From Ophelia neglecta (taxonomy: Eukaryota): a stretch of 64,000 nt of DNA. The translations under genes were made by a program, and so were the position numbers. The stretch spans positions 139,252,001 through 139,316,000 of the forward strand of contig OZ260661.1 in the NCBI GenBank assembly GCA_965285935.1, in the 5' to 3' direction. Position 1 is the first letter of the stretch. Every line of letters begins with the position of its first letter. Of this stretch, positions 18,800 to 47,595 are shown piece by piece. The notes beneath the pieces were generated by a model. It saw only the letters and a list, made by a program, of their open reading frames with translations. It searched no databases and was not told where the DNA came from.

Positions 18800-21700
18800 T
18801 TATTTGATCCCCTTAGCTGCTAGCTCCTCTTTGACTCTAGATAGGTAGGTAGGATCTGGGTAGCCGAACCTGTGAATAGAAAGATTAGTTAAAGAGATAA
18901 CAGAATAATACAAGGGGAAAGGAAAAAAAAAAGCAGGCTTACCTTGTGGTTCGAATATCATACTGTATACCAGTTACTTTCAAGAGAGAACAGTACCTAG
19001 CTGGCCCACCCGACATGTTAGTTTTGTGGTGGATATCATTCCAAGTTATTTGGTCATCCCGGCCTGTAGTTGTTGACCTCCCGATGGTAAATATCAGCCT
19101 GGCGTCAAACGCCCGTCTCAGCAGTCCTAGGACCTGGTTGCCTTCATCATTGTCTGGTAGGTAGGCCGTCTCACTGGTTGAACGATACCTGCGACCAGGA
19201 TTGGGGTGGCTTTCCTAAAATACAAACTCAATTACTGTGATAGCTACACTGGAGTTTCTACTTTTTTCCCCCACAAGTGTAATAGTATTGCCTGTAACAT
19301 ATATATAATGCCAGACTGTTAACTACCATCATAACATTTAACAAAAGTTCACTGTATATACCCTTATACAATTTTACCTCTTGCCTTCCGCCGGGGAAGT
19401 CATATTTGATTTCTATTGTACCGTGGCTATTATCAAAACCTGGAAGCCGGACATAGCAGTGTCTGGTTTTCATTAAACCATATGGCTGGTCTCCCTTCAT
19501 CTCCCCATAGATCTGACTGCATTTGGGGCAGATCGGTTTATTTTTGAACCAGGTATCAATGCATTCCTTGCAAAATACATGCTTGCAAATGGTAAGAACT
19601 TTTTTATTGGTCGGTGTTTCCATACAGATGGGGCACGTTTCCTCTGTATATGCTTTGTTTCGTTTTTCGTAACCGGGGACGTATGATGAGCCTGTAAAAC
19701 TCCTAGAAGATGTTGGAGGGCTGGAGCTGCCAACTGGTATTTGCTGATTATTGTACGACGCTCCTAGGCTGTGGGCTGCTCCTTGTGCAAACTCATCTGT
19801 TTTGATGACATGTTTAGAAGCATCATTGACGAGGAAACGTTCATACATCGGAGAAATGGAACATAGCTTTCCTAGGGCTACCGCCTGCTGGTAATGCAAC
19901 ATTAAAGCTTCTAGAAAGTCTTTATTGATATCAACAAAAGCAATGTCCCGGACTTTGGTATTCCCATTGCAACCAGTTATAAAGGCTTTGCATGCTTTGA
20001 ACATCTGCTGAGCAACTACATGGGCTGGAGAGCCGTAGATCCCTAAAGAGAAAATGGAAGGAATGGAGTTATATATAATATTTGAACATTTTTCGAATAA
20101 GAAGCCTATTAGAATAAACGATACCGTGCCCAAAAGACTTATTGACAAAGCTTGTATAGATATGTGTTTTTAGAAGCATGGGCCAGTTACCTGATCCTAC
20201 TGCCGGAATGGCAATAGATTGGAGGTTATAGCGGTCGGCCTCGGCCATGCTGTTCAAAAAGGCGCCATATAAAGCTATGGCCGCTTTCTCTTTGTCCATG
20301 TAGCCCTTCCATATAGGTCCTGCCACATGGATAATGCGTTTACATGGCAATTGGTATGCGCCTGTGGTGTAAACTTCAGATGTACCTAAAGAGCCATGTG
20401 TTTGAATACGTTCATCACATTCCAATTGAAGTTTTGGCCCGGCGGCTTTGCTGATGGCCCCGGCCACCCCTCCTCCATGTTTCAGTTGTGTGTTTGAGGC
20501 GTTGACAACCGCATCAACACGCAGCGTTGTGATGTCCCCTTGAAAAACATGAATCATCTCGCCATTCGTGGTGCGAAATGATGAACCAAGTTTGCCGTCG
20601 ATAATTTTTGTTTGGTCTTTAGCTAGTGTTCTTGTCCGTTTTACTTTTTGTTCCCGGCCTATATTTAGTTTAGTTTGCAAACATGTTTTGCTTTTTTCAA
20701 TATCTTCTTTTGGGCCAATTATGGAAATGACTCCATCAGTGTGATCAAAAAGTACATTTCCTTTAGGATCAGTGATGATTTCGATGGCTTTAGCAATATC
20801 TTCGCGCGTATTTTTTAAGGCAGAGACGTCCATCGTGACCTCGGATATTGACGTTTTGACTTTTGTAATGAGCTGTTGGAGGAGCGGGATTGCAATATCT
20901 ACGCATTCCTTTGCACCTTTCAGCACAATTGCACGCGTATAAAAACGCGTGGAGAGCTTAATATTATTTGTTCCACAAATATTGGCAAGATCGATTCTTC
21001 GGAAATTTACGATATATCGGTAAACATGGTTTGTTACATTAACATAGTATGTTAAGTTTCTGTTATGATCTTGGTATGGTTCGTCATCGATCCACACCTT
21101 CCCAGATGTCGGCTTGTTCCCGGAGACTTTGTCCTTTTCGCTTGAAGGGTATGCCGCTGTGTAATTTTTTCCGGAACTGACATTGAATTCTTCTTGTCTC
21201 ATGCTTTGCTGTCTTTGATCAAATTTCATAAGGTCATTGTATAACAGATTTACTATATCTTTGTTATCCCCGATTATAACTGTGCCATCATTGGTGTCGT
21301 CGCATATATATGTGTTCAAAGGACACACTTTCCTTTCGAGCTCTGCTGTATACACCATAGGCAAACTTTTCCAAACTAAATCGCCATTTTTGCTGATGCC
21401 TTGTAGCACATGCTTTAATTTCCTCAAGTAGTTTTCTCTGTACATCTCAACTTCTGGACATCCTCTTTTTCCAAAGATATTTATTTCTATATTGGCGTCC
21501 GCGATAGGTTTCTCAATGATAAAACATATGTCGTGTTCTTGCCAACCGGCATATTGCTTCAGGTGTTTATTTTTAAACCATAACCAATGAAATATATTAG
21601 CAATAAAAGTCTCTAGGTGTAAGCGTTCCTGTGAACGCTTATGATTTGGTTGGACGTCCTTAGGACGTGCTCCATTATGCCTAGCATGAGACGTGTCTGC

Positions 21701-22318
21701 AAACATATCCTTGGTGTGATCTAAGGTAGCATCTAATTGGTCGATATGTGTAGACCCTTGTTGAATTTCATTTGAATGGACAGAGTCAGAATTTGGTTCC
21801 AGATTAACGAATTTATTATTTTGCCCACTGATGTCGCTCTCGGTATTTCCGACATTTTCGTCCGCCCTTGCTCCCTGATCAGTTTCGTTTGCATCTTGAT
21901 CCATTTGCATTGTAATCGTAGGTTTCTGCGACTGCTGTTCGGAAAAAGTAGGTGAGTTTTCCTGTTTTGACAATTGGTCCTCTAATTTTACTCCACTCGA
22001 TCGTGTTGGTAGCTGTCTGCTTGAATTGTTGTCCGTTGTGGGTATCTGCCCCTCGCCCATATCTCTTTGATGTGGCGGCTCTTCCCCTTTTCCATTTTGT
22101 GTCGGTGGCTGGTCGTCTATTGAGACTGGTTCAGAGAAATATCTGCTGTCAAGGTACAATCCTATTGTTTGTACATTAGTCCATTTCCCCCTTATGTGTG
22201 CGTCTTTTTCCTGTACATATTTTAAGGTAGCTTCGTTGAGGTGAATGAATGCCCGATCTTTCTCGTCCAAGTTTAGACCAATTGTTTGTTTCAGAGTAGC
22301 ATGAATATCACCAAATAT
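18800..22318 (-). CDS. DTX3L: Macrodomain-RING-DTC E3 ubiquitin ligase (DTX3L-like) copy 2; exons 22318-20191, 20042-19378, 19214-18997, 18869-18800
   Basis: GT-AG introns in consistent phases (1,0,2). Macro motifs [24 protein letters not shown] and PAVGSG|[30 protein letters not shown] motifs [30 protein letters not shown] and [21 protein letters not shown]. The symbol denotes similarity, not proven orthology. Confidence 0.9.
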
Positions 22319-47200: not shown

Positions 47201-47595
47201 GGCAAACAAGACTCACACTATTTGTTGCTTTCTTCGATATAATAAAGGGTGCCATGTCTAAATAAACTTTGTCGTAGGAATCAATTCCATGTGTGTAACG
47301 TTTGCCTCTGCTTCATACTGAGAAGTTCACACTCACATGGTATATTTTCTTACGACAAGGTTTTTTCAGACATGGTACCCTTTGTTAATGTTAAAGAAAC
47401 ATACCGACTGTGTGATTGATGTCCCCCCCCACACCACCACCACCACCAAAATTGCAAACCTCGCCTAGTTCGTTAATTTATTGTGTCCTAAATATTTTCT
47501 CTCTCTCTCTCTCTCTCTCTCTCTATATATATATATATATATATATATATATATATATATATATAAATCTCTCTCGGTTACTTACCTGCGATCAT
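41298..47595 (-). CDS. Ubiquitin-specific protease (peptidase C19) catalytic domain; exons 47595-47586 (tentative), 45922-45812, 45627-45514, 45178-45094, 42878-42841, 42663-42593, 42495-42425, 42329-42252, 41913-41820, 41700-41578, 41384-41298
   Basis: Motifs in canonical order: GLKNVGNTCYLNAVAQC (Cys box), C...ECLFC, FEIGSQQDAAEY, LFAG...VKCSRC, NLEESL...YRCESC, VPEILCLSLNRF, YAFP, SAVITHTG....GHY and WVKYND (His/Asp box), SYILFY. Splice phases match throughout. The 45094/42878 junction forms TGA. Confidence 0.85.
45007..45068. repeat. (AT)n microsatellite
   Basis: Perfect TA dinucleotide run. Confidence 0.97.
47499..47565. repeat. Compound (CT)n(AT)n microsatellite
   Basis: Seen directly. 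Confidence 0.95.

What the first reader, a model, noticed from the sequence alone, without database searches (positions are those of the whole stretch)
18800..47595. Candidate single gene joining a deubiquitinase, a long modular coiled coil, a macrodomain and a Deltex RING-DTC ligase
Seen: on the minus strand, in order, USP exons (last motif SYILFY followed by a phase-0 CGG|gtaact donor at 41298), then 15 phase-0 coiled-coil exons, then the phase-0 acceptor of the macro exon (22318), RING and DTC. I recognised no start-bearing first exon for the E3 part between them. The summed model is ~294 aa USP + ~615 aa coiled coil + ~1026 aa. A homolog of the tentative first USP exon also sits downstream of copy 1 (4304-4331), suggesting USP-to-DTC is the repeating unit. 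Established: Deltex RING-DTC modules ubiquitylate ADP-ribose, macrodomains bind or hydrolyse it, and human DTX3L works with PARP9 and interacts with a USP (USP28). Inference: reader/eraser, writer and DUB combined in one chain or one co-duplicated cluster, an A20-like editing enzyme for ADP-ribose-ubiquitin signals, plausibly in invertebrate immunity. I know of no described protein with this architecture.
Basis: partly seen in the sequence, partly recalled or inferred. Interest (0 to 1): 0.92.

Follow-up and report, generated by a model that had tools for sequence, protein, structure and literature searches.

The report
Mosaic USP, coiled-coil, macro-Deltex ligase locus

Summary
On the minus strand there are USP exons (47595-41298), about 20 phase-0 coiled-coil exon copies (40193-22890) and a macro-RING-DTC gene model of exactly 1026 aa (22318-18800).

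- The coiled-coil array is a DNA-level copy (exons plus introns, 72-81% identity) of an internal segment of a long coiled-coil gene on another chromosome piece (C5:41544297-41557850), later amplified and shuffled.
- The USP exists only as four 92-100% identical copies inside this cluster.
- The tiny ATG exon and its upstream flank also head sister units that have no USP.
- The ligase belongs to a family of at least 40 macro-RING-DTC copies. Such proteins are already deposited from annelid and bivalve genomes.

A single transcript is not shown. The only public runs are DNA. For one chain: compatible phases, the native acceptor of the first coiled-coil exon, and a deficit of stop codons in the array. 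Against: a stop 7 codons after the USP, a possible poly(A) site, an in-frame ATG with a TATA-like box before the macro exon, eroded splice sites and broken sister units.

I put the one-chain reading at about 0.37. Other agents of this scan noted similar unproven domain fusions elsewhere in this genome.

The parts
47586..47595 (-). Tentative first coding exon ATGATCGCAG|gtaagt (phase-1 donor). It sits in a roughly 300-nt module (47570-47870) that also heads USP-less sister units.
   Evidence: Sequence; alignment with copy 3; 8 copies in the cluster.
45812..45922 (-). USP Cys-box exon (VSTGLKNVGNTCYLNAVAQCF...).
   Evidence: PDB phmmer best hits USP15/USP21/USP2, E about 1e-6; Pfam UCH genome hit.
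45514..45627 (-). USP exon 3 (CFNTECLFCGKLALVARRFFQERVGSPITPTELTESLN); weak donor gttaaa.
   Evidence: Sequence reading.
45094..45178 (-). USP QQDA-box exon; ends in phase 2 (TG|gtaagt). Its link to the next exon is unresolved.
   Evidence: (UCH positions 65-103).
42940..43053 (-). USP exon (..ILFYTGIVDCGKDYLSARVSQWNIILLEPLSKLP|gtcagt); the 5' boundary is uncertain.
   Evidence: Sequence reading.
42425..42495 (-). USP exon (NCGNLEESLKNNCEAELISYRCE..).
42252..42329 (-). USP exon (..SCNESGQAERSVFFTHVPEILCLSLN..).
41820..41913 (-). USP exon (RFNGNLEKNSKDYAFPYQLSIPDNVVSHDFST|gtaagt).
41578..41700 (-). USP His-box exon (..AVITHTGDTLEEGHYMSFIAVEEGWVKYNDSM|gttagt).
   Evidence: Pfam UCH E 1.2e-9; PDB hits Ubp6/USP14/Ubp8.
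41298..41384 (-). Last USP exon, ending SYILFYTKKPLQR|gtaact (phase 0). If it is not spliced, it reads VTVKVTI and stops at 41276-41274.
   Evidence: donor and stop conserved in all four copies.
40194..41297 (-). Interval between the USP and the first coiled-coil exon. 41033-40845 and 40249-40194 are homologous to the intron upstream of the CC1-type exon of the C5 gene. It contains AGTAAA at 41094 followed by a G-run, and TATAAATA at 40237-40230.
22890..40193 (-). Array of about 20 symmetric phase-0 coiled-coil exon copies of 7 types. Order: CC1 40193-40005, LQK, AQ, LLN, LDG, LQK, CC1b 30970-30782, QLA, LQK, QLQ, AQ, LDG, LQK, QLQ, AQ, LDG, LQK, LLK, LDG, last 22973-22890.
   Evidence: DNA-level homology to C5:41544297-41557850; stop-codon deficit; dN/dS.
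31127..35209 (+). LINE-type retroelement (endonuclease plus reverse transcriptase ORFs), antisense, inside an intron of the array. It is not part of the gene.
20191..22318 (-). Large E3 exon. It holds an N-terminal region, a middle region homologous to other family members, and the first part of a PARP14-macro1-like macrodomain. Acceptor ttcgattcacag|ATA; donor G|gtaact (phase 1). The ORF continues upstream to ATG 22396.
   Evidence: Pfam Macro E 2.4e-28; PDB PARP14 macro1 E 1.3e-37.
19378..20042 (-). Exon with the end of the macrodomain, a linker, the RING finger and the first 40 positions of DTC.
   Evidence: Pfam zf-RING_2 E 3.7e-10 and DTC positions 1-40; splice sites.
18997..19214 (-). 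DTC exon 2 ([10 protein letters not shown]...[17 protein letters not shown]).
   Evidence: DTC positions 34-113, E 1.8e-30; translation; splice sites.
18800..18869 (-). Last DTC exon ([23 protein letters not shown], stop 18802-18800).
   Evidence: DTC positions 110-133.

Best explanation
The stretch is a young, exon-shuffled unit inside a tandemly amplified family of DTX3L/PARP9-like ligases.

Shown:
- A complete macro(PARP14-macro1-like)-RING-DTC gene of 1026 aa.
- Directly upstream, an array of symmetric phase-0 exons. It was copied as DNA, introns included, from the middle of a long coiled-coil gene on chromosome piece C5, then multiplied.
- Upstream of that, a small micro-exon USP whose ATG exon and upstream flank are shared with USP-less sister units.

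Inferred, and the single most likely transcript model (about 0.37):
- Transcription starts before 47595 and runs through the USP exons.
- It uses the phase-0 GTAACT donor at 41298 and the native acceptor of the captured CC1 exon at 40193.
- It passes through a variable subset of coiled-coil exons. Any subset keeps the frame, so damaged copies can be skipped.
- It enters the macro exon at 22318.

The product would carry a deubiquitinase head, an oligomerising coiled-coil stalk, an ADP-ribose-binding or -hydrolysing macrodomain, and a RING-DTC module that puts ubiquitin on ADP-ribose. That would be writer, reader/eraser and trimmer in one chain. A shorter ligase-only product from ATG 22396 may coexist.
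For: - Domains and exon model.
- Same strand, with phases 0/0 at both critical junctions.
- GTAACT is a working type of donor here. The C5 parent gene uses CAG|gtaact at its QLQ exon, and the macro exon model itself ends G|gtaact.
- The CC1 exon at 40193 is by origin an internal exon. Its acceptor and most of the interval towards the USP are homologous to the C5 intron.
- A second copy of that interval serves as an intron inside the array, before CC1b.
- There is no in-frame ATG in the first six coiled-coil exons, yet the array looks translated. Across at least 109 substitution events in exon cores, 5.5 stops are expected under neutrality and none is seen (P 0.004). My own pooling of independent exon pairs gives dN/dS of about 0.7.
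- USP exons are twice as conserved as USP introns between units 2 and C (3.2% versus 7.0% difference).
- There is no AATAAA or ATTAAA between the USP stop and CC1.
- In unit A a deletion fused a coiled-coil exon in frame to the RING exon.
- The first-exon module heads every unit, whether or not it has a USP, so the USP lies inside a shared unit layout.
Against: - No RNA of any kind. The three runs that hold the locus are DNA.
- The USP looks like a self-contained minimal gene. Its ATG lies 4 codons before the Cys box, its stop lies 7 codons after the domain end, and AGTAAA plus a G-run 180-240 nt downstream could be its poly(A) site.
- The macro exon can start on its own. In-frame ATGs lie upstream of the acceptor in copy 2 (22396) and copy 3 (57139). 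The 145 nt conserved between these copies begins at a TATA-like AAATATAA about 47 nt before ATG 22396.
- The one sister ORF I read in full (L009) carries its own ATG in the big exon and has no coiled-coil exons.
- The coiled-coil exon types I searched with are confined to C1 139.15-139.45 Mb plus the C5 parent.
- Splice signals in the array are eroded compared with the parent gene (GT>GC, GTAAGT>GTTAGT, one TAG, one frameshift).
- Sister USP units B and C have a truncated macro exon, and C also has a frameshift.
- One USP exon junction is unresolved.
- No homolog with this architecture was found.
Confidence: 0.37

Rival explanations
1. Two separate genes. A small stand-alone USP (exon 1 to the stop at 41274) ends at its own poly(A) site. 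The macro-RING-DTC ligase is transcribed on its own, either from a promoter just upstream of ATG 22396, or from an unrecognised ATG exon that splices into the coiled-coil array. Their adjacency comes from segmental duplication.
For: - The USP is delimited by an ATG and a stop right at the domain borders.
- AGTAAA at 41094 is followed by a G-rich run.
- TATAAATA lies 37-44 nt before CC1, inside the longest perfectly conserved run (207 nt) between units 2 and C.
- In-frame ATGs and a TATA-like box lie before the macro exon.
- L009, the sister ORF read in full, starts in the big exon.
- All four USP-E3 pairs trace to one recent duplication.
Against: - The coiled-coil exons resist stop codons but have no in-frame ATG for about 250 codons.
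- CC1 is a native internal exon.
- The TATAAATA is a derived change of an intron sequence, and in CC1b it reads TAATAAATA.
- An indel between copies 2 and 3 shifts the frame between ATG 22396 and the acceptor, so that stretch is not under coding constraint.
Confidence: 0.35
2. A USP-coiled-coil gene ends after the last coiled-coil exon (read-through ...HCCENVRIFRSKY... then a stop), and the ligase is a separate downstream gene with its own start.
For: - The phase-0 link from the USP to CC1 is supported as above.
- The ligase has a possible start of its own.
- The parent C5 segment ends 10 nt past the donor of the last coiled-coil exon.
Against: - The donor of the last coiled-coil exon (AAT|gtaaga) is conserved in copy 2, copy 3 and the parent gene.
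- The macro exon has a very good phase-0 acceptor, with a ctaac branch site, exactly where conserved coding sequence begins.
- Unit A joins a coiled-coil exon to the RING exon in frame.
Confidence: 0.1
3. The upstream parts are debris of repeated unequal recombination. The USP and/or the coiled-coil array are no longer expressed as protein, and only the ligase, if anything, is functional.
For: - Eroded donors, one TAG and one frameshift in the array.
- An unresolved USP exon junction.
- Damaged sister units A, B and C.
- USP-less units carry a truncated N-terminal exon with TAA at codon 4 of its native start.
- A LINE insertion.
- A partial tandem copy of the ligase 3' half at 7050-13677.
Against: - USP exons are more conserved than USP introns.
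- The catalytic Cys, His and Asp motifs are intact in all four copies.
- The array shows a deficit of stop codons.
- The 1026-aa ligase ORF is fully open.
Confidence: 0.15

Closest known systems
Human DTX3L-PARP9 heterodimer (with PARP14)
   Same: - RING-DTC ligase chemistry, with the C-terminal motifs WNDIHHKT and [15 protein letters not shown].
- A macrodomain whose closest solved relatives are PARP14 macro1 and PARP9 macro1.
- Deltex RING-DTC modules ubiquitylate ADP-ribose (PMC7615817, PMC7500938).
- PARP14 macro1 is a hydrolase (PMC10499325).
   Different: - Here the macrodomain and RING-DTC are in one gene model rather than in two partner proteins.
- There is no PARP catalytic domain.
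- The N-terminal regions are unrelated, or related only distantly.
Deposited invertebrate macro-RING-DTC proteins (Owenia fusiformis CAH1781384.1/CAH1781385.1, Solemya velum KAL5021577.1, Pecten maximus XP_033731448.1)
   Same: The same Macro + RING + DTC order in one predicted protein. The ligase part of the finding is therefore a new member of a kind that already exists in databases, although it is uncharacterised.
   Different: - None of them matches the USP or coiled-coil exons.
- Identity is only about 35-40%, and is centred on the macrodomain.
- Amphiura filiformis XP_072026035.1 also carries DTC and Macro, together with PARP14-type RRM families, in its precomputed Pfam list.
A20/TNFAIP3-type editing enzymes (a DUB and an E3 in one chain)
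   Same: If the single chain exists, it would combine ubiquitin removal and ubiquitin attachment in one polypeptide. This comparison rests on general knowledge.
   Different: - A20 uses an OTU domain and zinc fingers, and has no link to ADP-ribose.
- The two are not homologous.
Exon shuffling by symmetric (0-0) exons and tandem exon-intron cassettes
   Same: The coiled-coil array is built from captured phase-0 exons that can be added, lost or skipped without breaking the frame.
   Different: The donor is an internal segment of an unrelated structural coiled-coil gene, and the recipient is an immune-type ligase cluster.

Membership tests
Deltex family E3 (RING-DTC) | C3HC4/RING-H2 finger immediately followed by a complete DTC domain at the C-terminus | tested here: met
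   - zf-RING_2 E 3.7e-10.
- DTC positions 1-40, 34-113 at E 1.8e-30, and 110-133.
- The exons join in frame.
Deltex family E3 (RING-DTC) | Conserved DTC pocket residues needed for ADP-ribose ubiquitylation (His of the HHKT stretch, acidic residue in the C-terminal helix) | tested here: inconclusive
   The motifs WNDIHHKT and KEEL are present in the translation. I did not align them residue by residue to a solved DTC structure.
MacroD/PARP14-macro1-like macrodomain | Macro fold with the N-x6-GGG loop and the second glycine-rich loop | tested here: met
   - Pfam Macro E 2.4e-28.
- Best solved match is PARP14 macro1, followed by YmdB, PARP9 macro1 and MacroD1/2.
- The sequence reads [18 protein letters not shown] and IPAVGSG|IYG.
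- Hydrolase activity itself cannot be tested here.
USP (peptidase C19) deubiquitinase | Cys box, QQDA box, His box and the Asp/Asn of the triad | tested here: met
   NTCY, QQDAAEY, GHYMSF and KYNDS; Pfam and PDB matches.
USP (peptidase C19) deubiquitinase | One uninterrupted reading frame through the whole catalytic domain | tested here: inconclusive
   The junction between 45094 (phase 2) and the exon at about 43053 could not be closed with a convincing exon.
   No RNA run holds this locus. The three holders are DNA. There is no protein of this species in the libraries.
   None of the 150 best homologs of the macro exon matches a USP or coiled-coil exon. The word-indexed search for long DTC proteins gave only two Amphiura proteins, neither with a UCH domain. 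Coverage of that search was poor.

The most novel reading that the evidence does not exclude
A lineage-specific immune-type enzyme in which one polypeptide carries four parts: a USP deubiquitinase, a length-variable coiled-coil stalk built from exons captured from a structural gene, a PARP14-macro1-like ADP-ribose reader/eraser, and a Deltex RING-DTC writer of ADP-ribose-linked ubiquitin. It would be a self-contained editor of the hybrid ADPr-Ub mark, assembled very recently by exon shuffling within a rapidly duplicating ligase cluster.
Probability: 0.35. Interest if true: 0.8.

Novelty: new variant of a known kind. Interest (0 to 1): 0.5.

Why it matters
If the chain is real, it would be the first case I know of in which a deubiquitinase is built into a macro-Deltex ligase. 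It would give a natural one-protein system for studying how ADP-ribose-ubiquitin marks are written, read and trimmed.

Even if it is not one chain, the locus is a clear, datable example of how new multidomain immune-type genes are assembled. An internal run of symmetric exons was lifted, with its introns, from a structural coiled-coil gene on another chromosome. It was then amplified in front of a ligase gene, and different N-terminal modules were swapped in behind one shared first exon.

The ligase part alone is an ordinary member of a large lineage-specific expansion.

Tried and rejected
- RNA evidence. The look-up of sequencing runs gave three runs of one sample. Laid on 39990-45960, they cover exons and introns evenly, so they are DNA. 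The listed joints are poly-G artefacts at 41015-41043 and 44243-44264.
- Protein searches:
  - The word-indexed search with the macro exon found nothing, because its words come from the fast-evolving first 500 residues.
  - The search with the CC1 exon found nothing.
  - The search with the RING-DTC region of a long Amphiura protein returned only two proteins.
- The intronless USP12/46-like gene on C9 was too distant to guide a spliced alignment of the USP.
- The exon linking USP exons 4 and 5 could not be found by enumerating AG...GT frames.
- The C5 donor gene could not be named. Its exons give only generic coiled-coil Pfam noise.
- A 2026 preprint on DTX3L-PARP9 co-evolution does not mention fusions, invertebrates or USPs.
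All searches were made exon by exon, by reference.
- I did not fill the N stretch near window 4230-4300.
- Considered and rejected: CC1 as a true first exon. It is an internal exon in the parent gene, it has no in-frame ATG, and it carries an out-of-frame ATG followed by an 11-codon ORF.
- Considered and rejected: the repeating USP-to-DTC unit as independent support. It reflects one duplication series.
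Full report
**Setting.** The window is G000:C1:139252001-139316000 of a 762-Mb, chromosome-scale eukaryotic genome. 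Another agent of this scan calls it a spiralian invertebrate; I did not test that. The finding lies in a dense cluster. A six-frame Pfam scan finds at least 50 loci with DTC and at least 40 with Macro, mostly on C1 between 136 and 142 Mb.

**The ligase part is real and complete.**
- The 775-aa ORF 20069-22396 (minus) holds a macrodomain (Pfam E 2.4e-28). The next ORF holds a RING finger and the first 40 DTC positions.
- DTC positions 34-113 and 110-133 lie at 18993-19232 and 18806-18877.
- Read base by base, the exons are 22318-20191 (acceptor ttcgattcacag|ATA, donor G|gtaact), 20042-19378, 19214-18997 and 18869-18800, with TAA at 18802-18800.
- The macrodomain's best solved relatives are PARP14 macro1 (E 1.3e-37), then bacterial YmdB, PARP9 macro1 and MacroD1/2.
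- The C-terminus reads ...[17 protein letters not shown] / [23 protein letters not shown].
- Macro + RING + DTC in one predicted protein already exists in databases for Owenia, Solemya and Pecten. Amphiura adds PARP14-type RRM families. This part is therefore a new member of a known, though uncharacterised, kind.

**The USP is real.**
- Exon 1 is ATGATCGCAG|gtaagt (47595-47586). It joins the Cys-box exon 45922-45812 to give MIAVSTGLKNVGNTCY.
- Further exons:
  - 45627-45514.
  - 45178-45094 (the QQDA box).
  - About 43053-42940.
  - 42495-42425.
  - 42329-42252.
  - 41913-41820.
  - 41700-41578 (the His box, Pfam E 1.2e-9).
  - 41384-41298.
- The catalytic Cys, His and Asp motifs are present. 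The subfamily cannot be assigned from such short exons.
- One junction is open. The QQDA exon ends in phase 2, while the next recognisable exon offers only phase-0 or phase-1 acceptors. Enumerating candidates gave no convincing linker.
- The last exon ends SYILFYTKKPLQR|gtaact in phase 0. Unspliced, it reads seven more codons to a stop.

**The USP has a single recent origin.** Its His-box exon has exactly four copies in the genome, 98-100% identical, all in this cluster. The next best hit is 35% identical. Units A and B are 98-99.6% identical to the window unit over several kb, and unit C is about 92% identical. The recurring USP-to-DTC unit is therefore one duplication series, not independent support. 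Between units 2 and C, USP exons differ at 3.2% of positions and USP introns at 7.0%, which suggests the USP is under constraint.

**The coiled-coil array was captured from another chromosome.**
- tblastn and blastn against G000:C5 show one copy of each of the seven exon types, in the order LLN, LDG, LQK, QLQ, AQ, CC1, last.
- They lie inside a long coiled-coil gene on the plus strand. Homology extends through the introns at 72-81% identity (C5:41544297-41557850).
- In the window the types are multiplied and reordered into about 20 copies, with a LINE inserted antisense at 31127-35209.
- Homology to C5 ends 10 nt past the donor of the last coiled-coil exon (22880). On the other side it ends at about 41033, roughly 265 nt from the last USP exon.
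- CC1 (40193-40005) is therefore by origin an internal exon, with its native acceptor and most of its native upstream intron. A second, decayed copy of that interval serves as an intron before CC1b at 30970.

**Is the array translated?**
- Independent pairs of copies, pooled by hand, give dN/dS of about 0.7, which is weak evidence.
- The exon cores show at least 109 substitution events. About 5.5 new stops are expected under neutrality and none is seen (P 0.004).
- Against that, three LDG-type copies carry GC where the parent has the GT donor. One copy ends in TAG, one has a frameshift, and the AQ donors went from GTAAGT to GTTAGT.
- All exons are 0-0, so any subset keeps the frame.
- The first six exons contain no in-frame ATG. 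If they are translated, the start must lie upstream.

**Evidence bearing on the USP-to-CC1 junction.**
- For:
  - The phases match.
  - The GTAACT donor type is used by the parent gene's QLQ exon and by the macro exon model.
  - The acceptor is native.
  - There is no AATAAA or ATTAAA in the 1.1-kb interval.
- Against:
  - The stop lies seven codons on.
  - AGTAAA at 41094 is followed by a G-run that could be a poly(A) site.
  - A TATAAATA lies 37-44 nt before CC1, within the longest perfectly conserved run between units 2 and C. However, it is a derived change of intron sequence and in CC1b it reads TAATAAATA.
- The donor and the stop are identical or nearly so in all four copies, which are too young to be informative.

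**Evidence bearing on the coiled-coil-to-macro junction.**
- For:
  - The macro exon has an excellent phase-0 acceptor with a ctaac branch site.
  - The last coiled-coil exon and its donor are conserved in copy 2, copy 3 and the parent gene.
  - The conserved coding sequence [18 protein letters not shown]... begins exactly at the acceptor and extends about 24 residues beyond where sister proteins start.
- Against:
  - The ORF runs on upstream to in-frame ATGs (22396 in copy 2, 57139 in copy 3).
  - The 145 nt conserved between the copies starts at a TATA-like AAATATAA.
  - An indel between the two copies upstream of the shared 14 codons shows that the far-upstream stretch is not coding in both.
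  - The sister ORF read in full (L009, an 1105-aa single ORF) has its own ATG and no coiled-coil exons.

**The sister units are mosaic.**
- The roughly 300-nt module containing exon 1 has eight copies. One heads each USP unit, and one heads each of three USP-less units.
- In the USP-less units, such as copy 3, it is followed by a truncated N-terminal exon of an ancestral ligase and then by coiled-coil exons.
- That truncated exon has TAA at codon 4 of its native start and no native donor.
- Unit A has lost the macro exon, and an LQK-type exon is fused in frame to the RING exon.
- Units B and C have a 5'-truncated macro exon, and C also has a frameshift.
- A partial tandem copy of the ligase 3' half lies at 7050-13677.
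- The cluster is being reshuffled quickly, and many products are probably dead. The window unit is the most complete one.

**External support for the architecture.** None. Among 1.84 billion representatives, the best match to the macro exon is 38% identical. None of the top 150 matches a USP or coiled-coil exon. No RNA run is available.

| Reading | My odds |
|---|---|
| One ORF from USP to DTC, at least as one isoform | about 0.37 |
| USP separate from the ligase | about 0.35 |
| USP-coiled-coil gene plus a separate ligase | about 0.10 |
| Upstream parts are decaying debris | about 0.15 |

The solid new result is the origin of the parts. An immune-type macro-Deltex ligase cluster captured symmetric exons from a structural coiled-coil gene, and it swaps N-terminal modules, including a private USP, behind a shared first exon.

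Noticed in passing
G000:C5:41544297-41557850 (loci L012, L013): The parent of the coiled-coil exons is an internal segment of a long plus-strand coiled-coil gene that spans at least C5:41529857-41571887. It carries one copy of each of the seven exon types, and its introns are homologous to those of the window's array.
   Followed up: yes
G000:C5:41549880-41551380 (L012/L013): Just after the AQ-type exon of the C5 gene lies a minisatellite of about 62-nt units, each resembling the exon's own 3' end and donor (KQLREEQRDVQLRV...).
   Followed up: no
window 31127-35209 (+): A LINE-type element with endonuclease and reverse-transcriptase ORFs of 141, 995 and 240 aa is inserted antisense in an intron of the array. 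The reverse-transcriptase ORF is open over 995 aa.
   Followed up: partly
window 7050-13677 versus 14150-20500: A 7.1-kb tandem duplicate (83-100% identity, with stretches of 100%) holds only the 3' half of the macro exon, the RING-DTC exons and the 3' flank. It is a truncated ligase copy, or possibly an assembly duplication.
   Followed up: partly
L007 2646-3245 (G000:C1:139191646-139192245, minus): In sister unit A a deletion has fused the start of an LQK-type coiled-coil exon in frame to the linker-RING-DTC exon, removing the macrodomain. This gives a USP ... coiled-coil-RING-DTC layout.
   Followed up: partly
L009 704-4021 (G000:C1:139456704-139460021, minus): A sister ligase has an 1105-aa single ORF (MKSKVLFRNSKY...) that joins a repeat-rich N-terminal region directly to the macro region, with no coiled-coil exons. 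It probably shows the ancestral gene layout.
   Followed up: partly
L001 4422-2752 and L011 about 6180 (copy 3 and the unit at C1:139170905): USP-less units carry a truncated N-terminal ligase exon whose native start reads ATG AAG AGC TAA. The AG just after that stop would accept the shared phase-1 first exon in frame (M-I-V-V-L-F-R-T-S-K-Y).
   Followed up: partly
window 55367-57139 versus 20069-22396: The macro exon of copy 3 lacks about 190 residues (roughly 260-445 of copy 2) and is otherwise 54-60% identical. This matches the island of divergence noted by another reader.
   Followed up: partly
window 40300-41050 and 35385-35820; C5:41554700-41555650: G-rich degenerate repeats (open frames read ...HITGG.KGG...) occupy the intron upstream of each CC1-type exon in both the parent gene and the copies. 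Their poly-G runs cause depth spikes and false joints in the laid contigs.
   Followed up: partly
G000:C1:139361062-139374844 (unit B): A roughly 13.8-kb insertion interrupts the USP intron corresponding to window position about 44600 in sister unit B.
   Followed up: no
window about 4230-4300: A run of N masks the position where unit C's copy of the first USP exon would end.
   Followed up: no
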